The notes beneath the pieces were generated by a model that was given only the letters and a program-made list of their open reading frames with translations, was not told the origin of the DNA and ran no database searches. The translations under genes and the position numbers were made by a program. A stretch of 63,134 nucleotides of DNA, the filler included, from Reticulomyxa filosa (lineage: Eukaryota; Protista; Foraminifera): the NCBI GenBank assembly GCA_000512085.1. It is 19 parts of 19 records of this genome, joined end to end, with 100 filler letters (N's around TTAATTAATTAA, not from the genome) between each part and the next. Parts side by side here need not be neighbours in the genome. Positions count along the whole stretch, not along the records: positions 35,697 to 43,472 come from ASPP01001222.1; 18 more parts are not named here. One strand, given 5' to 3'. Shown here piece by piece: positions 3,345-43,572 of this stretch. Position 1 is the first letter of the stretch. Every line of letters begins with the position of its first letter.

Positions 3345-5535
3345 ATGATAACCAAAATACAATACAAAAATTTCCTGAAAGACAAACTAAACAAATTCAG
3401 CATCTTATTACTGTCTTTCAAACTTTGAAAGAGTTGCCCACTCTACTTGATCGAGCTCAATGTGTGCTACACAAACACGAACTCCTCATTTGTGGGGGTT
3501 TTTATCAAAAAGCTTGTTATTCTTATCATACAATTAAAAACGAATACAAGTTTATCTGTGAGTATCCAAGTGATATTATATTAGATGGACACTGTGTAGT
3601 GAAACTGGTAGATAATAACAACAAAGACAAAAATCAAATCACATTGTTGTCTTTTGGATCTTCTTCGTTTGTGAAAAAAAAAACATACATTGATGATGAA
3701 ATATGTAAGTGTTTGGAATAATATATTAGATATATCAAATAAATCAAATGAATTCAACAATTATAATAAATGGATTCCTTTCATAGATAATCATAATCAT
3801 CCAATTATCATTGGAAGAGATAATGATGATTATACTGGAATGCGTGCATTGATTGGTGGAAGCAACAACCATTTGTTATTTATTACTTATTGGAAAAATA
3901 ATATTAGTGTGTTTGATTTACATAAATTTCGATTTATTAAACATTGTACTTTACCGGCTAATAATGAAATATGGTATCATTGCTTTATATCAAATTCAGA
4001 ACATGGACAAGGACAAGAAATGATGAAAATAAATAAACAAAATTATCAAATGCTATTATTTTGTGGCAAGACAGGATTATCAATTGAATATAATGAAAAT
4101 AACAACACTTTTCAATTTCGTCAACTGTCTGTTTGCAAGGATATTGCAACATTAATTTCATATGCATATGTATACATCAATGGCGTCATCTTGTTCTTTG
4201 GTGGATGGGATGTTAATGACAGTGTTGTTTCAAAATCAGTGTACAAGTATTCAATTCGAAAAAAAAAGTGGAATAATTTAAAAATATATTGCCTGCTCGA
4301 TTGTATGACTGTCCTGGAATATTGAATGAAGATAACAGTTATATATATATCATTGGAGGACATAATACATCGACAAACATGAAAATAAGATTGAGTGAAT
4401 TGATAGATCATATGCAGGTAAGCTTTCTTTTGTAATTAAACATCAATATAAACTTTATTATATAAAATTGATTTAAAAACAATTAACAGACAAAAAACGA
4501 AATAAAATTTATTATTCAACATTGGATTCGAATTTTAAAGATAAGATTAGGATGGATTGATGATTTTAATAAAATTATTACCAAATATGTTAAGTAATGT
4601 TTTTTTAATATATAAATGATTATTAATTATGTAATTCACATTTTTTTAAATAGGTAAGAGGTTTTGAATCATTAATGATTTTACGAGGACATGACAATAC
4701 AGTAAACAGTGTACAATTTTCTGCAGATAGTTGCAAGATTGTTTCGGCATCATATGATTGCACTGTTCGAATATGGGATGTTGTATCAGGAAAACAACTT
4801 CAAATTTTCATAGGACATACTGATCGAGTATTTTCTGCAAGATTTTCGCCAGATGGAAACACTATTGTTTCATGTTCAGGTGATAAAACAATTCGATTAT
4901 GGAATATTAATACAGGAAATGAAGTAATGAAATTAAGAAATGATTCAAATAAAATACTTGATGTAGAATTTTCTCCAGATGGAAGATATATTGTGTCAGA
5001 TTTGAAAGATAATACAATACAATTATGGGATTTATATTCTGGAATGGAGATAACAAAATTATTAGGACATTCAAGAGATGTTGTAAGTACACGATTTTCA
5101 TCAAATGGTAAAATGATTGTGTCATCAAATGATAAAATAATTAATTTGTGGGATGTAGAATCTGGTGAAAGATTAAAACAATTTAAAGGACATTCCAGTC
5201 GTGTAATGCGTGCAAAATTTTCTCCAGATGATAAATTTATTATTTCCTGTTCATTGGATGCTACAATTCGAATATGGAATATTGAAACAGGAATAGAATG
5301 GAATATATTGAAAGAACATTCACACCATGTGAATGATATAAAATATTTTCCAGATGGTCAAACAATTGTGTCGTGTTCAAGTGACAATACAATTCGATTA
5401 TGGAATGTAGAATTAGTGAAGAGAATACAAATATTGGAAGGACATTCTCAAGCTGTTAGATGTGTGGATATTACTCGAAATGGAAATACAATTGCATCAG
5501 GTTCTACAGATTGTACAATTCGAATTTGGAAATGA
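3345..5535 (+). pseudogene. Kelch + LGW exon + WD40 fusion gene with three frameshifts in the Kelch exon
   Basis: Kelch exon 3345-4417 is paralogous to 1433-2458, with shifts just after the ATG, at the A-run ~3675-3683 and at ~4275. Intron 4418-4489; exon 4490-4588 (33 codons); intron 4589-4653; exon 4654-5535 in frame with a 7-repeat WD40 ORF. Confidence 0.75.
4654..5535 (+). CDS. Seven-bladed WD40 exon (GH...FSPDG...IVS.S.D.TIR.W type)
   Basis: Seven GH-WD-like repeats in an intact ORF; preceded by an AG acceptor at 4652-4653. Confidence 0.9.
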   Translation, partial: VRGFESLMILRGHDNTVNSVQFSADSCKIVSASYDCTVRIWDVVSGKQLQIFIGHTDRVFSARFSPDGNTIVSCSGDKTIRLWNINTGNEVMKLRNDSNKILDVEFSPDGRYIVSDLKDNTIQLWDLYSGMEITKLLGHSRDVVSTRFSSNGKMIVSSNDKIINLWDVESGERLKQFKGHSSRVMRAKFSPDDKFIISCSLDATIRIWNIETGIEWNILKEHSHHVNDIKYFPDGQTIVSCSSDNTIRLWNVELVKRIQILEGHSQAVRCVDITRNGNTIASGSTDCTIRIWK

Positions 5536-6785
5536 CTAAAATGCATAAAAAATGAATAAAATTTTTTGAATGAAACTCAAGTTCACTTTTTGCCATATAA
5601 AGTTATCAGATTGAGAATCACTTTGTGGAATAGACTTATTTTAAAAGATAATTATTAAAATTGTTTTCATTGAATATTGTTACTAAAATTCGTAGTATTG
5701 TTTAATTTAGTTTTTGAATTTGCTTTTTTTATTAACAAATTAAATAGAACTTTTCAAATAAATGCAAGAGGTACAACATATGTATATGATTTCTATGCAT
5801 CCACAAAATTATTTTTACTTTAGCTCTTTTCAATAAAGATATACAAGTCAAATACTAAAAAAGCAACCTTTTTTTGAGTGTACGGTTTTTTTTGCAAATT
5901 ACTGTATCTTGATTTTTTAAAAAAAATTGAAAAAGTTGCGTCCAATGTTTTTTAAAGAATTCAAAAGCATAATAAATGAAAATTGTATTTAAATAGCAAA
6001 TAAATTGCAAGATATTTTGAGTATTGTATTTTTTCATCGCAGATCAATATTATTTTTTTTATGTCTATTTGCTATTGTTTTTTGTATAATATCGAACACT
6101 TAAAACAGTATGAAGAATATTTAATTTTTTAATGACAAAACAAAAAGTCATAACAATATTTAAAACAAATACTAAATGAACTAATATTTGTAACAGATTC
6201 TCTTCATGAGGAAAAGGAATACTTAAAGAAGTACATTTATGTTTATAGGTTTATGGAAAAATATTTGCTTTATTTAATTAATGAAATTTTTCCTGTTATT
6301 GAAAAACGATTTTATTCCAAAATAAAAGTAGTCTTTTAATTTTACCTTGTCTTTTAAGTCTTAGTTCGTTATGTTAGAACACTTGATTTGTGTTGTTGGA
6401 GTCATTGGGATTTAGAAGTTCCACTCCGATGTCAGCATCAGCAACAAAGAAAAATCGAATAATGTGTGTTGGTTTTTTTCCCAAAAAAAAAGTTGTATTT
6501 AAAAAGGGACAACACGAAACTTTATTTTTATAAAGTGGTTAACATTATTGGACAGCTATTTATTTTTAATTTTCTAAGAAAGCAAATGAAAACTACAGCA
6601 AAAATTTAATCCCTTGCATTTTTTTGAAACGAAGATTTGAATAGTTTGTTCAACTCTGTTGCTTGTTCTTTCAAGTAGTCCTTCAAATGTTCTTCAAAGA
6701 GAAGATTTAAAAATAAATAACTCAATTTTTCTTTTTTAATTTTTTTTAACGAAATTGCGGAAATAAGCAATTATTGTCAACAGAG

Positions 6786-6897
6786 TGTAGGAAGATTGAA
6801 GTAGCACCAAGTGTAATAAGAAAGTAATTACTGAAAGGTGTTTTCAAAAAGCAAAAAGTAGTTAATAATCAAGATAAACAACTCACTGACAAGAAAT
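6786..6897 (-). mobile_element. Solo-LTR-like repeat, copy A (truncated by contig end)
   Basis: Plus strand TGTAGGAAG...AAGTGTAATA matches the end of the copy at 11001. Confidence 0.5.
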
Positions 6898-6997
6898 NNN
6901 NNNNNNNNNNNNNNNNNNNNNNNNNNNNNNNNNNNNNNNNNTTAATTAATTAANNNNNNNNNNNNNNNNNNNNNNNNNNNNNNNNNNNNNNNNNNNN
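6898..6997. other. Artificial contig linker N44-TTAATTAATTAA-N44 (first of 18)
   Basis: Identical 100-nt linkers with stops in all six frames also start at 10741, 12893, 16588, 17907, 19919, 25354, 27460, 30101, 32161, 35597, 43473, 47029, 50912, 53628, 55947, 57541 and 59232. Confidence 0.98.
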
Positions 6998-7050
6998 TAT
7001 TTTGGTCTAGATGCTTAAACTTCTTTTGTTTGCATTTTGGGATATAGTCA

Positions 7051-35696: not shown

Positions 35697-38600
35697 TTTT
35701 TTTTTGTATATATATATATAAACATAAATATAAAGATGCACTACAAGAATACTGTGCGCGGGTGGGATTAATTGAAAGAGCTTACAATCTCAAAGTCACG
35801 CGTATGTGTTTATCTGTATTTTTGTGTTGACCACAAAAATCTTACACTGTTTGCGACGAAAAGAACGATAGAGACAACAAGCAAAACAAAATAAAATAAA
35901 ATAAAGATCGAGACGATGCAGTGAGAAGCAATTGCGCTTTGTTTTTGACAGCCATGGGCATGGGAAATTACTCCTCACTAAGATTCAAGTTTTTTTTATT
36001 GTTGTTGGTTTGTGAAGAAGGAAAACAAAAAAAATTAAGAATAAGAATATAAAAAAAGTTGAAACAAAAAATGATGATGAAACGAAACATAGCGAAATGT
36101 ACGCATGCATGTGTACGGATATGGCGATGCCATCTTCAGCTCTGTCGTTAGCGATTTGGCGCTTGTGTCGCACGGGGAGATCTCAGGACGCACGTGAGAG
36201 GGATAAACTAATGAATGTGCTGTTGCGACTATTGGAAGAAGACCCATCTCTAAAAACAGAGCCCACGTTTTCGAGCAATCACTTGTATCCCAAAGAATTT
36301 GACACAGATGTATACGATAGCAATAGCAATGAAAAAGAAAAAGATAAAGATAATGAAAACAAAGACAATCGACAACGCAACAATTCAATGCAAAACAGGA
36401 GAGAGGAGACAATAGACCCATATCCAAGGAATCCGACAATAGCACGACTACACGAAAGCGACCCAAGTCTGCCTCCGTTAAAGCCAAGGTTGATGAAACA
36501 TTTGAGCGACGGAGCCAATGATATCCGACACTTGAATCACGTGGATCAAGCGGAGGATTGGAAGCCTCAAGATTTTCCGCTTCCACTCGTCACGTCGTCC
36601 TCGGTGCCTCCTCCGTCCCAAGTCTCTGCTGTCTCTGTTCCCGGCCCCACGAATAATGTGATATCGGCTACGACATCGTCGACGTCAAGTCCGTCTTTCC
36701 CTCCCAAAAAGCATCACTGGACCTTGGAGATCGACTCGCTGGACGCGAAGAGCGACAACGTAGACATGGACGAGAGTGAGTGGAAGAGGGATACGTTGGG
36801 ACGACTCCAATTGCAAGGGTCCAAGTCGGAATGGAAGGAAGACGACGCAGGTCGCATTGATCCGGACAAGCGAGAGCGAAGGATACAAGTAGTTGTAAAG
36901 GCGAACAAAGCCACGTCAATGAAGCGTAGGGTGTCCGACCCTTTGTGCACCAGCATGCAATCATCATCGTCATCGTCATCATCATTGTTCGCAAAAGTGA
37001 AGGCCACAATTGTACCATTTTCCGAGAGAAAGCTCGACGTCGCGATGTTGCATTCGGCACCGTTGGAAGGGGAGACAGCATTGGACTTGGGATTGGAACG
37101 CGACAAGCTGGAATACGTATTCCGTCGAACCCAGCGACGAATCGGGGTGTTTTTCGGTGTGCTGACGAAGCAATCGCTGATGATGTGTATCCAACGCGGT
37201 GCGCAGATTGTGCATATCAGTGGCCATGGCCCCAATGCACAGATGCTGCAAGTGGAGAATGGACGAGGAGGGATGGAAATTGTTACGAGTACCATGATCA
37301 AAGCAGCTCTCACCGACAGCTTGTGGCAACTGAAGTTGGTCTTTGTCTCCACCTGCTTCAGCGAACAGGTGGCGTCGGCATTTGTCGAGGCGGGTGTTCC
37401 ACACGTCGTCGCCGTGCATTCGTTGGTGCAGATCCACGACAAGGTCGCTATTGCATTCGCGCAAAGCTTCTATGAACACTTGCTCGGCAACAAGAACGTG
37501 GTCTTGGACGCCTTCAAAAATGCACAGGCCCAGCTCAAGTTGCAAGACAAAGACGACTGCTGTTGTCGTCATGAGGGACACAAGGAAGAGTGCTTATGTC
37601 CATATTGCAAACAGGTACGCTGTTGTAAAATACATCATTCAGCATCTTGTCCCGGAGCTGTTACTACAAATGCTGCCAATACTTCCAATTCTTCTTCTGT
37701 ATCCACGGACACTACGTCGACTTTCACTGTTGCCAACCCAAAGCCCCACACGAACATTCAAAGAAATTTCTATTGCTCGGTAAAGACGATCACAAGGAAC
37801 AAGTCCTTTGCGATGCCAATACCACTCCATTGGTATCCGACGACGAACTGATTCAACCCATAGTCCATCCTCTTCCAACCAACTTTGCACAGGGCGCACG
37901 TGATCGCAGCAACCCTATGACCGTGCTGGGACGACAGGAGGACATTCGCAATCTCGTGGAATTGCTGCATCCAGACGGCATTCGACCGCAGGACATGGTG
38001 GTGCTGTGTGGACCTAAATACGTGGGATGCACTACTGTCGGACAAGGGGTTGCCCAATTCTTTACTCGCCCGTGGTACACTCCGATTTTCCCCGGTGGAG
38101 TGTGGTGGATCGATTTGCGACCATTAGTCGATCCTGATCGTCTCTTTGGCTTCATTGCTGATCGCATGGCCGTGGGAATCGATCGAGGAAGGTTCCAATA
38201 TCGCGATCCGGGGACAAACCAAATGATGGACTATCCCAAAGACATACACGATCAGATCTGCAGCGAACAATACAAGGAAACGCCCAATGTCATTCATTAT
38301 ATCGACGAAGTACACGAACAAGATCATTACATTTTGTTCCGTGCTCACAAATATCAGGATCAAACACTGCATGCGCGACTGGAAAAAGACATTTACGTGC
38401 ACGTATCTACGCTTTTTAAAAAGTGCTCGCTCAATGAATTTCCGAAGGAGGTCTGGAAAGACCACCAAACTGGCACGGTCCAATCTCGTCGTATCATTTT
38501 CAAACCCATGGACGAACCTTCGGTTTTGGCTCAAATCAAACAGAAATGCCATGGACCCACTCTGTTTATTTTGGATCATTTGGAGTACAAAGAAGATCAA

Positions 38601-39427
38601 CTGAAACGCTTTCTCACCACTCTCAATTCCTTGTCCAATGAAATACATCGTGTTCGCATCTTGCTCATTTGTCATTCCAATATCTACAAACAAATCGAGG
38701 CTTTTGATCGCCTGCGCTTTCAGTATCGAGTTGATTGTCGTGTCTATCGATTGAAGGCTATTTCCAATGTTGATGCCTGTCGATTACTTAGAATACGGTT
38801 TGCTTTTCATTTTTGTGTTTGGTTCACATTTAAGGAAAGAAATACCAATATATTACAAATAGCACAAGACAACTGACGGAGTATGACTTCCAAGGATTGC
38901 CTCCCCCTCAATCTACCCAAGATTTAGCACAGTATCCTCTTTTCCATTGGCTTGCCAAGGCACCCAAGTTAATCGCAATGTGCGCAAAGTTGGTGGATTT
39001 GGACGTACCCTTGTGCGTTATCATTCGTTGCTCACAAATGCCTTCCACCAAATGGAAGTCGGCTTTAGAACCTTTCAAAGAGTCCATTGTCGTCAACGGA
39101 GGCGAAGATTGGTATAACACCGCATTAACTCAGCTGCCTGTGCTCATGGGGCAAATCGAAGCTGTCAAAGATCTGTGGAGTGAATACAATGACGACAATG
39201 AAGGTAATAACAACCCTCAGAACAGTAGTAATAGTGATAACAATAATATCGATCATAACAACAATAACAATAGCAATAACAATAATAATAACAATAACAG
39301 TAATAATAATAATGATAAAAATAGCAATAATAACAATAATAATAGCGAAGATAACAATAAAAATAGCAGTCATGATAATAAGGACACTACTGAAAGTGAT
39401 GTCAAATCTGAGAACAAAGACACATGA
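35697..39427 (+). CDS. CHAT (caspase-fold) domain + STAND/NB-ARC-like NTPase protein, 5'-truncated
   Basis: CHAT motifs IVHISGHG, LVFVSTCFS, GVPHVVAV and AFAQSFYEHL. STAND motifs VLGRQEDI, GPKYVGCT, FPGGVWWIDL, TLFILDHLE, VRILLICH and YRLKAISNVDACRLL. One frameshift at ~37725; intron 38798-38862; two small upstream exons; Asn-rich tail. Confidence 0.82.
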
Positions 39428-40404
39428 ACAAGACAGAGCAAAGCAAAAAATGGAATATTTGTAAAACATTTGTTTTTGAATTAAGATTTAGAGCCAGCTT
39501 TGGCTCCATTTCTTCAGCCGAGTGTCCATGGTTCAAACCTCCTCTCTCTTTTGTGCGCATTGGTTATACCATGAATTTTCTCTTTGAAATTTTATGGAAG
39601 TCCCTTGGGTTCTTTGAATATGTGATAGATGTTTGCCGGTTATTGATGCATTAGAACTGTGTCTGTTTTTTCCTCTTTCTTTTTTTTTCCCTTTACGCCT
39701 TTGTTTTTCTTCATTTTTTTTTAAACTTTTTTTTCCCCTTGTAGGCGGAAATATATTCCCATTTTTTGAGAACCTATGAGACGTAAACAAAAATTTTGTT
39801 TGTGGTTTGTGTTGGAAATATTTCACTACTCCAACATTGCTTTGTAACAAATTCATGCAATACTGTGCTTTCTTCTGAGCGGTTGTGCAATATTCCTGCA
39901 GTGGTACTGTCCACGCTTTAGTTGTGTCAATTGTAGTTGACACAAATTACACTTGTTGCATTGTTGTGATTATTTTACTCGCGTTTTCTCCTTTTTAATG
40001 ATAAAAATATTTTGCAAATTAAAAAATTTATTTTTTTGCATAATCTATCTTTGCTCAAGCGCTACTGACAATAACAAACGAGATAAATGTTGCTTAAAAA
40101 TAAATCAAGCAAAAATTTTTTTTTCCCAAATAACATCATTTTAGTTATTGTAACCTTAGGGAACAAAAAAGAGCATAACAATAATTTTATAAAAGTTGCA
40201 AATGCAAAGAAAAAATTATAATAAAAAATAAAATGCACAAAGGCAGTCAAGCAATAAAAAAGGTAAAAATCTACAAAAAAACTTAAATTTAAGCAATTCT
40301 TTAAAAAATCAAATTTTGTCAAAAAAAGAATTTACATTTTTCAAACAATTAGGAAATACGTAATAAAAACCAAAATCATTTTTAAAAATACACAATTTGT
40401 AGAT

Positions 40405-40470
40405 ATGTTGTTTCTTTATGAAGAAATTGGTCATCTATATAAGGTGTCAACCTTCTTTTGCATTATAGTG
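40405..40470. mobile_element. Tc1/mariner-like terminus, copy 1
   Basis: Similar to 43573-43651; ends GGTGTCAACCTTCTTTTGCATTATAGTG followed by TA. Confidence 0.5.
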
Positions 40471-43151
40471 TAATTTACAATAGTGCCAACCGGTCAGCAA
40501 TAGATAGCGACACATTTTGAGCGATTGTACACTTAAATATATGCTCTTAGACACAAAAAAAAGGAAAAATTTCATCAATTTTTCATTTTGAAGATAGAAA
40601 ATTACACGAGCGCGACTTGGAATAATCAGGCAAAATGCAAACGAGAACAAGAAGAGAGGTGAAAAAAGCAATGTTTTACCACATGATGGAATCTCTTGAT
40701 CTTTGCCTTGCACGGGTCAATGCTTGCTTTAATTTCCGTTTTTTTACTTCTTATTCTTACTAATTTTTTTTTTTCACTTTCTTGTTTTAAATTGTGATTC
40801 AACAGACTTAATTAACTCTTCGTGGCTTTAGAGTATATTCAAACAATATCAAATTGAGCATTTTTGTAAAGAAGAACAGTGTTGGTCTTCCTTTCACCAA
40901 CTGTATCTACAAAGTTGAGAACTATCGATCCTTTTTCGAAACTACTGCGCTCTTCTATACCTCAGAAACAAGACCAGGAGTTAGTGCTTCTTTCATCTCG
41001 GTCTATCACAAACTAATCCTTTTTTTGTGCACTTTGTTGACTAAACTGTTTTTCTGTTGCTTTTTAAAAAGTAAAAATCAAGTATTGAAAAAGATTGCAA
41101 CAAAATTGCATATTGTACAAAACTGTTTGTTCTTTGAAATAAAAAAAATATCAAATAAAATCACACTAAAAAACAATCTTATTTTTTCTTGATTTGTTGT
41201 TATTCTTAAAATAGACTTCTTTTCAGAGTTCAACTAATTGAAAAATAAAAAAGCTACTATATGCACAAATGCAAAAAAGTAGAAGACACACTACTTTTTT
41301 CTTTTTCTCTCTACTTACTTCGTCTAATTCACTTTCTATCTCTCGTCCTTACATTTTATGTCTAAAACAGCAACTGAAGTCGACGACACTTTGCTCTAAT
41401 TATCATGATTCACAAAATCATTGGGTATGAATTACCAAAAAGCAAGGTTGAAAAGGAGAATCAATTCGATTGGTTTAATTATCATATCGCAAGTTCAACT
41501 ATATTCAAAATAATAGAAAACACATAGTAGTCTATTATTATTAAAGTATATGATATAAAAAAAACATACATATAAAATAAACAAATAATTTATAAATAAA
41601 TGTCTGGGGTGAAAGAGTCTATTTTCAATTTCAATTTATTCAGGAACACGCTTTCCAATGTGTGTTGATATATGTATTTATGATATTTCTTTTTTTTTAA
41701 AAAATAAATAAAAACAAAGATATAAATACATTTACATTCATTTCATTTTAAATACACTAATAGGACATTGGCCTCCATAATTCGATAGTCATAGTCGCAA
41801 ATATAACAACGTCACTCCAAACATCACATACACTATTACTGCTAAACTCCTCCACTACAAACACTGACAAAATTGTCAATGTAACAGCATTATCACAAAG
41901 ATATGATGCAATCTCCACATGTCTATATCTTTTGTTGTATCAATAACAACAATATCAAATCTTCAACCAACCAAATTTATATTTACACTATCCGCCAATA
42001 CATGGTCATTGTTTTCGAATTGTTGAAGTTTCAGCAAATACATGAAATATAATTCAAATTAGTCTTTCTAAATCTTGTATGCAAACACAAGATTACGAAT
42101 ATGGAATTGATATGGCTATATGATATCTAAAAAATAAATTAACAATATTCATCATTTCAAGTTTTGAATGTTTTATTTCAAAAAATAATTTGAGATACAG
42201 CACAAGAATTTTCGTAAGTATCACAAAGATAAGTACCTGAAGACAAAAAAAAAAATAGAATGTTTGTGTTTGGCATAACTACGATGGTCTGATAACTTCT
42301 ACTGAACATCGAGCAAAACCGAAACTCACGAACTGATAACAATGCTTGTGAAGGCGATCATGACTGCAGAGGTAAGGTTTTTTTACCATAATAGGCTATA
42401 TTGCAAGCCATGCTAGGACAAAATACTGCACATGGAATTAGTGGTGACAGTGGAAATGGAATTAATTATGGTATTGATATGAAAAATTCCAGGACATTAA
42501 ATTCATAAAATCATGCAATACCAAAACAGCAGAACAAGATGGATATAACAATAACGCTAAAAGAAGCGATATGAAAAAAAAACACTAGATGGTGGACTAA
42601 TATATGAAGATGTAAAAGACAAAGAATTTTCGATTAAACTTGCAAGTCGTTGTGTCAAGTTCAAATACAACTGACTATATTATATTTGAAAACGTTTGGA
42701 AAAATAATATCTGAGTTCGACAACAATTAATGTGTGCAAATACTCCAACAATTATAGTAACTTCAATTAAGCAAGGAAACTAAAATCAACTTATGTTATT
42801 AAGTTTATGTGATTAAAGAACAAGAAAGGTACTAGTGCATAGTAAAAAAAATAAAAAAATTTCTAGACAACTTGATTGAAAAAGTTGTTTTTCGAATGGC
42901 ATTTGTGTTTGAACCAGCTATTGACTCCAGTACCTGAAGTTTATTTGGAAATAAAGTGACTGAGAATTTTCCTGCTGAAGGCAAGTGGAAAATTATTGGA
43001 AATTTCACAAATTTGTACAACATTGGACAATTGGTAGATTGAACTGTACAATATTATTTTTGGTCAAGATCAAGTCATTGGAAAAAAGGCCAAAAGGCTA
43101 GAGAAGCGGGAAAAGAGCTAAAGTAAAAAATAATACATTTAACAAAGTTTA

Positions 43152-43400
43152 CACTTGTGCTTAAAAGAAGCTTTATGTGTAATTTACTACTTGGTGGCGT
43201 CGCCCTTGGCTTTTATCACAGCATGAATGCGCTTAGGCATTGAAGCAATAAGCCTATCACACAAATAACACTCAATCGAGTACAATTGCTTCTAAATTCA
43301 TCAAAGAGCTCCTCTTTGCTGGAAAATGGTTCATTTTTGTAAGTACGGCACTTGGTAATCCACCAAAGGTTCTCAATTGGATTCAGATCTTGTTTGCCAC
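43152..43400 (-). mobile_element. Tc1/IS630-type DDE transposase remnant (C-terminus) with candidate TIR
   Basis: DLNPIENLW motif and, after a frameshift, DRLIASMPKRIHAVIKAKGDATK* (stop 43187-43189). Candidate end TA|CACTTGTGCTTAAAAGAAG at 43152. Confidence 0.85.
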
Positions 43401-43572
43401 TTTTCACCTTGAGGAAAAAGAAGGATGTAGAACTTTTCAAATAAATGCAAGAGATAAGATAGTACAACATAGNNNNNNNNNNNNNNNNNNNNNNNNNNNN
43501 NNNNNNNNNNNNNNNNTTAATTAATTAANNNNNNNNNNNNNNNNNNNNNNNNNNNNNNNNNNNNNNNNNNNN

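What the first reader, a model, noticed from the sequence alone, without database searches (positions are those of the whole stretch)
35697..39427. NLR-like gene: caspase-fold CHAT protease fused to a STAND NTPase
The CHAT dyad is intact (His in HISGHG at 37225; Cys in VSTCFS at 37354). An NB-ARC-like module follows in canonical order: GR motif, P-loop, F.GGVWWIDL, Walker B LFILD, sensor ILL, L..IS..DA..LL, and a GxP-like helix. Protease-STAND fusions drive immunity and cell death in bacteria and fungi. Here there is no C-terminal TPR/WD40/LRR sensor, only an Asn-rich tail. The N-terminal exons look HEAT/ARM-like (DDAVRSNCALFL, SALSLAIWRLC), suggesting a rearranged architecture or sensors supplied in trans. 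It is a candidate for an undescribed rhizarian innate-immunity or programmed-death pathway.
Basis: partly seen in the sequence, partly recalled or inferred. Interest (0 to 1): 0.8.

Follow-up and report, generated by a model that had tools for sequence, protein, structure and literature searches.

The report
Foraminiferal CHAT protease fused to dead STAND-like module
This Reticulomyxa filosa gene joins an intact caspase-like CHAT protease to a STAND/AAA+-shaped module that has lost its key ATP-binding lysine, a design shared by a small family found so far only in foraminifera, and this copy has two reading-frame inconsistencies that could not be resolved here.

Summary
The piece is a Reticulomyxa filosa contig; the gene is annotated as RFI_01212 (partial).

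**Confirmed**
- The CHAT domain passes Pfam's threshold.
- The His and Cys of the dyad sit at the stated coordinates and are invariant in the family.
- The second module has no Pfam hit. An ortholog models confidently (pLDDT 89) as an AAA+ fold of the Orc1/Cdc6–STAND type (Z 13-15 to Cdc6, Apaf-1, CED-4, ZAR1). A language-model search with the window's own exon gives AAA_16, NACHT and NB-ARC clusters.
- No repeat sensor follows, only a helical end and an Asn-rich tail.
- The N-terminal exons are real, and their intron positions are shared with a paralog.

**Corrected**
- The "P-loop" has Cys where the Walker A lysine belongs. All 16 family sequences that cover the site lack that lysine, and the second Walker B acid is His or Gln. 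The module is therefore probably an inactive, STAND-like scaffold.
- The frame break lies in 37657-37727 and is not an intron. A second frame problem follows the start ATG.
- Purifying selection is strong, so assembly error or a very recent lesion is likely. No reads could be obtained to decide.

**Verdict**
It is a new eukaryotic variant of the known protease–STAND theme (fungal CHAT-NLRs, bacterial caspase-iSTAND). An immune or cell-death role is untested.

The parts
35736..35801 (+). Exon 1. The ATG at 35736 aligns with the start codon of paralog L003, but a 5-nt extra stretch follows it. The conserved reading (…GLIERAYNLKVT, codon positions counted from 35732) is therefore out of frame with this ATG. 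There is no in-frame ATG in exon 1.
35802..35906 (+). Intron 1: 105 nt, GTATGT…AG, GC 0.30. Same position and phase as in paralog L003.
   Evidence: The junction codon CAT gives the His found in orthologs (…SHRDR…).
35907..35988 (+). Exon 2 (RDDAVRSNCALFLTAMGMGNYSSLRF), part of the conserved N-terminal helical domain.
   Evidence: tblastn with P0011.
35989..36092 (+). Intron 2: 104 nt, GT…AG, GC 0.22. Position shared with L003.
   Evidence: The junction codon AAC gives the Asn found in orthologs (F-N-E/D-M).
36093..38797 (+). Exon 3, the large exon. It holds the end of the N-terminal domain, a low-complexity linker, CHAT, the Cys/His-rich module and the STAND-like nucleotide-binding-type domain. 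It contains one frame break.
36094..36264 (+). C-terminal half of the N-terminal helical domain (…SALSLAIWRLC…). In the ortholog model this domain is 7 helices over about 98 aa with pLDDT 78-91. No family could be assigned.
37021..37557 (+). CHAT (caspase-like, clan CD) protease domain. Catalytic His at 37225-37227 and Cys at 37354-37356.
   Evidence: Pfam PF12770, E 8.9e-11, 42.2 bits against a cut-off of 24. Dyad invariant in the family. Ortholog model matches the SAVED-CHAT structure 8tl0 at E 1.3e-6, rmsd 3.0-3.5 Å.
37558..37769 (+). Cys/His-rich module (CCCRHEGH…C.CP.C…RCC..HH…C…CCQP..PH.HS.KF), conserved across the family and a probable metal-binding linker. In this copy the frame-break segment interrupts it.
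   Evidence: No Pfam hit. Low to middling pLDDT (52-68) in the ortholog model.
37657..37727 (+). Frame-break segment of 71 nt. Paralogs L001 and L003 have 15 nt here and read through in one frame. The segment contains no AG, so a canonical intron cannot lie within it. Read in the upstream frame it encodes a Ser/Thr/Asn-rich insert. Upstream codons fall in frame 1 (coordinate mod 3) and downstream codons in frame 0.
37923..38797 (+). STAND/AAA+-type domain:
- GR motif 37923-37937
- degenerate Walker A GPKYVGCTT 38010-38036, with Cys 38028-38030 in the lysine position
- beta-2 strand FPGGVWWIDL 38088-38117
- inserted alpha/beta subdomain, about 38172-38510
- Walker B-like LFILD-H 38562-38579
- sensor-1-like strand 38655-38678
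- lid helix 38745-38795
   Evidence: Ortholog model pLDDT 89, pTM 0.82. Foldseek and VIA matches to Cdc6/Orc1, Apaf-1, CED-4, ZAR1, NRC and TnsC at Z 13-15. Language-model hits on this exon to AAA_16, NACHT and NB-ARC clusters at 0.90-0.95. Motif table.
38798..38862 (+). Intron 3: 65 nt, GT…AG, GC 0.26. It joins frame 0 to frame 2. The NCBI model reads through it to a stop codon and so loses exon 4.
   Evidence: tblastn with P0005 continues at 38864.
38863..39187 (+). Exon 4, first part: the C-terminal helical region with the GxP-like helix HWLAKAPKLI (38945-38974). It is homologous to the C-terminal end of the orthologs (the ortholog proteins end, or pass into unrelated low-complexity tails, shortly after it).
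39188..39427 (+). Asn-rich low-complexity tail, encoded by imperfect AAT/AAC repeats, followed by the TGA stop at 39425-39427. The tail is absent from orthologs.

Best explanation
The locus is one paralog (RFI_01212) of a small gene family found so far only in foraminifera.

Shown:
- The gene has four exons.
- Its product runs in this order: an N-terminal helical domain of about 100 aa, a disordered linker, a CHAT caspase-like protease with an intact His/Cys dyad, a Cys/His-rich module, a domain of AAA+/STAND architecture, a helical C-terminal end, and a low-complexity tail.
- The AAA+/STAND-type domain carries a large insertion between the Walker A and Walker B positions.
- Its nucleotide-binding signature is degenerate across the whole family. 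The Walker A lysine is replaced by Cys, Leu or Thr, and the residue after the Walker B aspartate is His or Gln.
- No repeat sensor is present.

Inferred:
- The STAND-like module no longer works as an NTP-driven switch. It serves as an assembly scaffold that brings CHAT domains together and activates them by proximity, as the apoptosome does for caspase-9 and as SAVED-CHAT filaments do.
- The trigger would be read by another part of the protein (the NBD insertion, the Cys/His module or the N-terminal domain) or by a partner in trans.
- The biological role (cell death, immunity, self/non-self control in fusing reticulopodial networks) is a guess from analogy.

This copy: it shows two frame inconsistencies, a 5-nt extra stretch after the ATG and a 71-nt segment where paralogs have 15 nt. 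Strong conservation downstream makes draft-assembly indel errors or very recent lesions the likely causes.
For: - Organism and annotation. P0002 (RFI_01212) comes from a 7776-bp contig, the same length as this piece.
- CHAT: Pfam hit above threshold, dyad invariant, fold match to 8tl0.
- Family with the same order of domains. EukProt proteins of Nonionella stella and Bolivina argentea hold CHAT and module 2 in one protein.
- Only 14 hits at E<=1e-3 among 1.84 billion representative proteins.
- Fold of module 2: model pLDDT 89. Foldseek gives Cdc6, Apaf-1, ORC, SSO1545, ZAR1 and NRC2 at E 4e-5 to 2e-4. VIA gives Z 15.0 for Orc1/Cdc6, 13.9 for Apaf-1 and ZAR1, and 13.7 for CED-4.
- A language-model search with the window's own exon returns AAA_16, NACHT, NB-ARC and nSTAND clusters at 0.90-0.95, and all ten best hits belong to one clan.
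- Sub-threshold AAA_16 hits lie over the loop in orthologs: P0010 at 7.4e-4, P0005 at 0.1.
- P0007, a distant CHAT relative, carries canonical GCGKS and has NACHT, NB-ARC and nSTAND1 hits above threshold. Its Walker A, Walker B and GxP motifs align in register with the family.
- The degenerate motifs are tabulated.
- Selection: pN 0.18 against pS 0.78 versus paralog L001. At 157 sites conserved in outgroups, the window has 0 changes of its own and L001 has 4.
- Introns.
Against: - No sequence-based test reaches significance for STAND. There is no Pfam hit for the window's module. hhalign against P0007 gives probability 2.8%. The PDB profile search gives only E 0.02 to Elp5.
- Structure does not separate STAND from Orc1/Cdc6, TnsC or MuB; the Z values are tied within 1-2.
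- The models are of an ortholog that is only 32-39% identical to the window in this region, not of the window's own protein.
- Loss of nucleotide binding is inferred from motifs only. A basic residue at loop position 4 is common in the family and could in principle compensate.
- Oligomerisation, proteolysis and any immune or death role are untested.
- Two frame problems in one copy may mean that this copy is dead.
- No expression data could be obtained.
Confidence: 0.6

Rival explanations
1. The window copy is a recently inactivated pseudogene of the family. Both frame inconsistencies are real: the out-of-frame start ATG and the break in 37657-37727.
For: - There are two independent length changes that are not multiples of three in one gene of about 3.4 kb.
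- Paralogs L001 and L003 read through the Cys-rich region in one frame.
- The family is multi-copy in R. filosa, so loss of one copy is plausible.
Against: - There is no in-frame stop in the roughly 1.6 kb of coding sequence downstream of the break.
- pN/pS is about 0.23, with synonymous sites saturated.
- At 157 outgroup-conserved sites the window has 0 unique replacements and L001 has 4.
- Paralog L003, from the same draft assembly, also has a lone frame break in a homopolymer-rich stretch. That fits assembly error as well as it fits decay.
- The assembly is highly fragmented: 50,809 scaffolds, N50 3.6 kb (PMC13746701).
Confidence: 0.3
2. Module 2 is still a working STAND NTPase switch. It would bind nucleotide through non-canonical residues, such as the Lys or Arg frequent at position 4 of the loop (G-x-x-[KR]-x-G).
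For: - The glycine-rich loop, the following Thr/Ser and the Walker B aspartate are conserved family-wide.
- A basic residue sits at loop position 4 in most members.
- The fold is intact at high confidence.
Against: - The window has Tyr at position 4, with its Lys at position 3. L001 has the same loop residues, and its first Gly is Ala.
- Paralog L003 has GLPFVGCTT, with no basic residue in the loop at all.
- P0010 has Gln at position 4.
- The catalytic acid after the Walker B Asp is His or Gln everywhere.
- From general knowledge of P-loop NTPases, loss of the Walker A lysine usually abolishes nucleotide binding.
Confidence: 0.15
3. Module 2 descends from another AAA+ clade (Orc1/Cdc6-like or TnsC/MuB-like) rather than from STAND. 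The NLR resemblance would then be only the shared AAA+ plan.
For: The best structural match is archaeal Orc1/Cdc6 (2qby_B, Z 15.0), followed by TnsC at 14.1-14.7. No STAND Pfam model reaches threshold.
Against: - The Z values of Apaf-1, CED-4, ZAR1, NRC4 and PAB2304 are within about 1 of the top.
- The language-model neighbours are AAA_16, NACHT, NB-ARC, nSTAND and AAA_22 clusters, none carrying an ORC, Cdc6 or TnsC family.
- The only sub-threshold Pfam hits are AAA_16, AAA_25 and NTPase_1.
- An N-terminal effector fused to the NBD is the STAND design.
- The nearest outside CHAT relative, P0007, carries a canonical STAND domain in the same position.
Confidence: 0.15
4. CHAT and module 2 are two adjacent genes or transcripts rather than one fusion protein.
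For: - The frame changes between them in the window.
- In paralog locus L003 the public annotation calls CHAT (4661-5461) and module 2 (5601-6724) as separate genes.
Against: - In the window they lie in one exon, with no stop between them apart from the frame change.
- The conserved Cys/His module bridges the two parts.
- Paralog L001 reads from the Cys-rich module into module 2 in one frame.
- Orthologs P0003, P0004, P0005, P0006, P0009, P0010 and P0011 are single proteins with both parts. P0005 is one uninterrupted 953-codon ORF.
- In L003 the gap between CHAT and the Cys-rich module reads as an AT-rich stretch consistent with an intron; its splice sites were not checked.
Confidence: 0.04

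Closest known systems
Fungal HET-Q2-like protease NLRs (CHAT or S8 protease, NACHT/NB-ARC, repeats) that cleave gasdermin-like HET-Q1 (PMC8851545)
   Same: It is eukaryotic. A caspase-like CHAT protease serves as the effector of a multidomain protein. A proteolytic cell-death trigger is the proposed logic.
   Different: The fungal proteins have Pfam-recognisable P-loop NOD domains and WD40/TPR/ANK repeats, and they cluster with gasdermin genes. Here the NOD-type domain is degenerate, no repeats are present, no gasdermin-like neighbour is seen in the 4 kb downstream, and a Cys/His-rich module is added.
Bacterial iSTAND proteins of vWA-MoxR ternary conflict systems (PMC7159879)
   Same: An inactive STAND domain carries caspase-like peptidase or alpha-helical (Death-like) domains at its N-terminus. 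This is the closest architectural precedent for 'protease plus dead STAND'.
   Different: The bacterial proteins are operon-encoded and work with MoxR and vWA partners. No sequence link to this family was detected (no Pfam or PADLOC hit). Whether the foraminiferal proteins need an ATPase in trans is unknown.
Apaf-1 / CED-4 apoptosomes with caspase-9 / CED-3
   Same: Module 2 matches the NB-ARC folds of Apaf-1 (Z 13.9) and CED-4 (Z 13.7). In both cases a caspase-fold protease would be activated on an oligomeric platform.
   Different: In animals the protease and the platform are separate proteins joined by CARD domains, and the platform binds (d)ATP and carries WD40 repeats. Here the two are one chain, the Walker A lysine is absent, and there are no repeats.
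SAVED-CHAT of type III CRISPR systems (PDB 8tl0)
   Same: It is the best structural and sequence match for the CHAT domain (Foldseek E 1.3e-6; phmmer E 0.018). By its title, the entry is an activated filament.
   Different: Its sensor is a SAVED domain that binds cyclic oligoadenylate, not an AAA+ module. It is bacterial.
P0007, an unnamed eukaryote-like contig protein with CHAT and a canonical STAND domain (Logan SRR22824304)
   Same: CHAT is followed by an NBD in the same order. Its CHAT matches the window's at E 5e-11 and 34% identity. The Walker A, Walker B and GxP motifs align in register.
   Different: P0007 keeps GCGKS and passes the NACHT, NB-ARC and nSTAND1 thresholds. It lacks the Cys/His module and the NBD insertion.

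Membership tests
CHAT (Pfam PF12770, clan CD caspase-like peptidases) | Profile score above Pfam's gathering cut-off | tested here: met
   42.2 bits against a cut-off of 24, E 8.9e-11, residues 309-487 of the ORF that starts at 36097.
CHAT (Pfam PF12770, clan CD caspase-like peptidases) | Catalytic His (H-G) and Cys dyad | tested here: met
   HISGHG with His at 37225-37227 and VSTC with Cys at 37354-37356. Both are invariant in the 13 family rows that cover them.
CHAT (Pfam PF12770, clan CD caspase-like peptidases) | Caspase/hemoglobinase alpha/beta fold | tested here: met
   The full-length ortholog model matches SAVED-CHAT 8tl0 at E 1.3e-6, rmsd 3.0-3.5 Å over about 193 columns. This was tested on ortholog P0005, which is 48% identical to the window in this region, not on the window's own chain.
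CHAT (Pfam PF12770, clan CD caspase-like peptidases) | Peptidase activity | not testable with these tools
   Needs a biochemical assay.
STAND NTPases (Leipe et al. 2004 definition, from my own knowledge) | Walker A GxxxxGK[ST] with the invariant lysine | tested here: not met
   The window has GPKYVGCTT, with Cys at 38028-38030 in the lysine position. All 16 family rows that cover the site have L, C or T there. L003 has GLPFVGCTT.
STAND NTPases (Leipe et al. 2004 definition, from my own knowledge) | Walker B hhhhD followed by a second acidic residue | tested here: inconclusive
   The Asp is invariant (38574-38576). The next residue is His or Gln in every row. An acid follows two or three residues later in some members only.
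STAND NTPases (Leipe et al. 2004 definition, from my own knowledge) | AAA+-type NBD followed by a helical and a winged-helix-like module | tested here: met
   The ortholog model (pLDDT 89) gives Z 13-15 to Apaf-1, CED-4, ZAR1, NRC4 and PAB2304, but equally to Orc1/Cdc6 and TnsC.
STAND NTPases (Leipe et al. 2004 definition, from my own knowledge) | Significant match to a STAND sequence profile (NB-ARC, NACHT, AAA_16, nSTAND) | tested here: not met
   The window's module gives no hit at E<=1. Orthologs give only sub-threshold AAA_16 hits, at 7.4e-4 and 0.1. hhalign against P0007 gives probability 2.8%. The language-model neighbours are STAND clusters, which is a lead and not a test.
STAND NTPases (Leipe et al. 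2004 definition, from my own knowledge) | GxP motif helix after the NBD | tested here: inconclusive
   AKAPKLI in the window and KSPALI in orthologs align with GNPFAI of P0007. The proline is kept and the glycine is not.
NLR (NOD plus C-terminal LRR or other repeat sensor) | C-terminal repeat domain | tested here: not met
   No Pfam repeats were found. Orthologs end, or pass into unrelated low-complexity tails, shortly after the helical module, and the window adds only an Asn-rich tail.
Orc1/Cdc6 initiator AAA+ | Best structural match and canonical Walker A | tested here: inconclusive
   The top Z is 15.0 (2qby_B), tied within 1-2 with STAND proteins. The Walker A lysine is absent. No ORC/Cdc6 Pfam hit was found.
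Known anti-phage defence families (PADLOC) | Match to any PADLOC model | tested here: not met
   No hit at E<=0.1 for the window's exons or for orthologs.

The most novel reading that the evidence does not exclude
Foraminifera carry a lineage-specific, single-chain 'apoptosome'. In it a caspase-like protease is wired to a STAND scaffold that no longer depends on nucleotide, and activation is gated by metal or redox state through the conserved Cys/His cluster or by the inserted subdomain. Such a protein could execute cell death or non-self rejection in their fusing reticulopodial networks. This would be an independently evolved eukaryotic counterpart of the bacterial caspase-iSTAND proteins.
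Probability: 0.15. Interest if true: 0.75.

Novelty: new variant of a known kind. Interest (0 to 1): 0.5.

Why it matters
Protease–STAND fusions are a recurring design of immunity and regulated cell death in bacteria, fungi and animals. Almost nothing is known about such systems in Rhizaria. A full-text search found no paper that mentions both foraminifera and the CHAT domain.

Three features make this family useful:
- It is conserved under purifying selection.
- It keeps the protease dyad while discarding the ATPase signature. That makes it a natural test of whether a STAND scaffold can gate a caspase-like protease without a nucleotide switch.
- It gives a concrete entry point to cell-death or self/non-self biology in foraminifera.

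The work also corrects the public gene model. That model deletes a conserved motif through an artificial intron, and it drops the first two exons and the last one.

Tried and rejected
1. A canonical intron as the cause of the frame change. The 71-nt segment 37657-37727 contains no AG. GT-AG pairs of the right length class (37660-37763, as used by the NCBI model, and 37699-37763) would delete the family-invariant CCQP..PH.HS.K motif. That span also has exon-like GC (0.45, against 0.22-0.30 for the three real introns). Rejected.
2. A 28-nt GT-AG candidate at 37615-37642. It has the wrong phase and lies in sequence conserved with paralogs. Rejected.
3. A Walker A lysine 'relocated' to loop position 4. 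The window, L001, L003 and P0010 all lack a basic residue there. Kept only as a weak rival.
4. Sequence tests for STAND. phmmer and hmmsearch against PDB sequences gave only weak Clp/Hsp104 loop and Elp5 matches. hhalign against P0007 was not significant. Pfam, NCBIfam and PADLOC gave nothing for module 2.
5. The N-terminal domain. Pfam gave nothing. The PDB profile search gave only TDP2 at E 0.16. The language-model search gave scores below 0.9 with some ARM-like clusters.
7. The R. filosa genome paper is not held in the library, so the sequencing chemistry could not be checked.
8. Rfam found nothing in the piece.
9. The spliced protein was never joined.


Full report
**Source and gene.** A word search with the second module returned [quoted passage not shown] at 66% identity. 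A search with the CHAT part returned RFI_01212, 910 aa, from a contig of 7776 bp. That is exactly the length of this piece. The piece is therefore a contig of the fragmented R. filosa draft assembly, which has 50,809 scaffolds, N50 3.6 kb, on average 2 introns per gene and a mean intron length of 87 bp (PMC13746701). Three long plus-strand ORFs in three different frames cover 36097-39427. GC content is 0.42-0.53 there and 0.23-0.35 in the downstream 4 kb.

**Gene model.** tblastn with two complete orthologs (P0005, P0011) maps five collinear blocks on the plus strand. Together with the GT-AG sites and a DNA alignment to paralog locus L003, this gives:

| Feature | Coordinates | Notes |
|---|---|---|
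| Exon 1 | up to 35801 | |
| Intron 1 | 35802-35906 | 105 nt |
| Exon 2 | 35907-35988 | |
| Intron 2 | 35989-36092 | 104 nt |
| Exon 3 | 36093-38797 | |
| Intron 3 | 38798-38862 | 65 nt |
| Exon 4 | 38863-39427 | TGA at 39425-39427 |

- The three split codons read His, Asn and Arg. The His and the Asn match the residues that orthologs have at those positions.
- Introns 1 and 2 sit at the same positions and phases in L003.
- The introns are AT-rich (GC 0.22-0.30), against 0.47-0.54 for the exons.
- I did not build or search the joined protein. Every exon was handled by reference on its own.

**The public model RFI_01212 (P0002) differs in three ways.**
- It lacks exons 1 and 2.
- It bridges the frame change with a 104-nt "intron" (37660-37763).
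- It reads through intron 3 to a stop codon, and so loses the last 187 codons.

**CHAT.**
- Pfam CHAT scores 42.2 bits against a cut-off of 24, E 8.9e-11.
- The His of HISGHG is at 37225-37227 and the Cys of VSTCFS at 37354-37356.
- Both are invariant in all 13 family rows that cover them.
- The closest solved sequence is the SAVED-CHAT protein 8tl0.
- The full-length ortholog model matches that structure at E 1.3e-6, rmsd 3.0-3.5 Å.

**Second module: sequence evidence.**
- Pfam and NCBIfam find nothing for the window's module.
- An exhaustive HMMER search of 1.84 billion representative proteins found only 14 proteins at E<=1e-3. All of them are members or fragments of the same family.
- The full-length members share one architecture: N-terminal helical domain, low-complexity linker, CHAT, a Cys/His-rich stretch, the module in question, and a helical end.
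- Two members come from EukProt sets of the foraminifera Nonionella stella and Bolivina argentea. The rest come from marine metagenomes and Logan assemblies.

**Second module: structure evidence.**
- AlphaFold2 on residues 520-953 of ortholog P0005, with a 17-row family alignment that includes the window's exons, gave pLDDT 89 and pTM 0.82.
- Foldseek against the PDB returns Cdc6, Apaf-1, ORC subunits, SSO1545, ZAR1 and NRC2 at E 4e-5 to 2e-4, and RdrA at 2.8e-4.
- VIA-align gives Z 15.0 for archaeal Orc1/Cdc6, 14.0-14.7 for TnsC, 14.0 for NRC4, 13.9 for Apaf-1 and ZAR1, and 13.7 for CED-4. The result is the same whether or not Foldseek preselects the chains. Classical AAA proteins come lower, at about Z 11.
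- A language-model search with the window's own exon (37728-38795) returned AAA_16, AAA_22, NPHP3_N, NACHT, NB-ARC and nSTAND clusters at 0.90-0.95. All ten best hits belong to one clan.
- Orthologs give sub-threshold AAA_16 hits exactly over the loop.
- A more distant CHAT relative, P0007, has a canonical STAND domain after its CHAT. It has GCGKS, and its NACHT, NB-ARC and nSTAND1 hits are above threshold. Its Walker A, Walker B and GxP motifs align in register with the family.

Together these results show an AAA+ domain of the initiator/STAND type. STAND is the more likely origin, but no sequence statistic proves it. hhalign against P0007 gave a probability of 2.8%, and the PDB profile search gave only E 0.02 to Elp5.

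**The "P-loop" is degenerate.**
- The window's loop is GPKYVGCTT (38010-38036), with Cys at the Walker A lysine position.
- Paralog L001 has the same residues (with Ala for the first Gly), and L003 has GLPFVGCTT.
- All 16 family rows that cover the site have Leu, Cys or Thr in the lysine position.
- The Walker B aspartate is invariant, but the residue after it is His or Gln.
- This is therefore a family trait held under selection, not decay of one copy.
- A subdomain of about 120 aa with alpha and beta elements is inserted between the Walker A and Walker B regions. This probably explains the long alignments to RuvBL proteins, which carry an insertion at that point (the RuvBL insertion is from my own knowledge).
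- No repeat domain follows in any member. The window adds an Asn-rich tail encoded by AAT/AAC repeats.

**Frame problems in this copy.**
1. Between CPG (ends 37656) and CCQP (starts 37728) lie 71 nt. L001 and L003 have 15 nt there and read straight through. The excess is 56 nt, which is not a multiple of three. The segment has no AG. The annotated intron would delete the invariant CCQP..PH.HS.K motif and has exon-like GC.
2. The ATG at 35736 aligns with L003's start codon but is followed by 5 extra nt. The conserved frame therefore has no start codon in exon 1.

Evidence against long-standing decay:
- There are no stops in the downstream coding frames.
- pN is 0.18 and pS 0.78 against L001.
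- At 157 sites conserved in outgroup orthologs, the window has no change of its own and L001 has four.
- L003 also shows one isolated frame break.

I rate assembly error or an otherwise functional gene at roughly 0.6-0.65 and a young pseudogene at about 0.3.

**Mechanism (inferred).**
- The intact protease, the conserved AAA+-type scaffold and the loss of the nucleotide signature point to proximity-induced activation of CHAT on an assembly platform that is not driven by NTP hydrolysis.
- The closest precedent is the bacterial iSTAND proteins. These are inactive STAND domains that carry caspase-like peptidase or Death-like helical domains at their N-termini, within vWA-MoxR conflict systems (PMC7159879).
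- Fungal CHAT-containing NLR-like proteins that process gasdermins are the nearest eukaryotic parallel (PMC8851545).
- No sequence link to either group was found.
- What triggers assembly is unknown. Candidates are the Cys/His cluster, the NBD insertion, the N-terminal 7-helix domain, or a partner in trans.

**Verdict.** The interpretation needs two corrections: the module is STAND-like in fold but is probably not an NTPase, and this copy's integrity is unresolved. It is a new eukaryotic variant of a known design, restricted so far to foraminifera.

Noticed in passing
window 43216-43470, minus strand: An 84-aa ORF at the right edge of the contig carries the …DLNPIENLW… motif typical of Tc1/mariner DDE transposases. 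The Pfam DDE_3 hit is weak (E 0.031, last 28 positions of the profile). It is probably a transposase relic cut off by the contig end.
   Followed up: partly
window 37660-37763 and 38798-38876 (public model RFI_01212 = P0002): The public gene model bridges the frame change with an intron that deletes the conserved CCQP..PH.HS.K motif. It also reads through the real intron 3 to a stop codon, so exon 4 and exons 1-2 are missing from the deposited protein.
   Followed up: yes
L003 (ASPP01018417.1) 3520-7030: This is a third R. filosa paralog locus. CHAT (4661-5461) and module 2 (5601-6724) are annotated as separate genes. An AT-rich, presumably intronic stretch separates CHAT from the Cys-rich module, whereas the window has none there. 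A single frame break lies between …ESRRIVF and …AILSQIREKC at about 6330, so one more copy in the same assembly has an isolated frame problem.
   Followed up: partly
L002 (Logan SRR24907496 contig) 4157-7018: Ortholog P0005 is one uninterrupted ORF of 953 codons, flanked by closely spaced called genes (PALP, Mob1). The R. filosa copies, in contrast, have at least three introns. The source organism of this contig is unknown.
   Followed up: no
L004-L006 (ENA and JGI marine metagenome contigs named ANAN14, KiloMoana and Lau): The identical 192-aa family fragment P0013 (Walker B region to lid helix) occurs on contigs from three marine metagenome samples. One of the contigs also carries a gene with a BTB domain. 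The family is therefore present in uncultured marine eukaryotes.
   Followed up: no
window 39229-39368: Imperfect AAT/AAC repeats (periods 6, 18, 21 and 24) encode the Asn-rich tail. A second copy-specific low-complexity insert, rich in Ser, Thr and Asn, sits at the frame-break segment 37657-37727.
   Followed up: partly
window 35736-35771: The ATG that aligns with the paralog's start codon opens only an 11-codon ORF (MHYKNTVRGWD, then a stop) in the assembled sequence. If the sequence is correct, this would act as a short upstream ORF, and the next in-frame Met of the main reading is in exon 2.
   Followed up: partly
window 39428-43215: This is about 3.8 kb of AT-rich sequence (GC 0.30) with only short ORFs. 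Five of the longer ORFs gave no Pfam hit above threshold (one weak DUF3935 match, E 0.025), and there were no Rfam matches. No gasdermin-like or other partner gene is visible next to the CHAT gene.
   Followed up: partly
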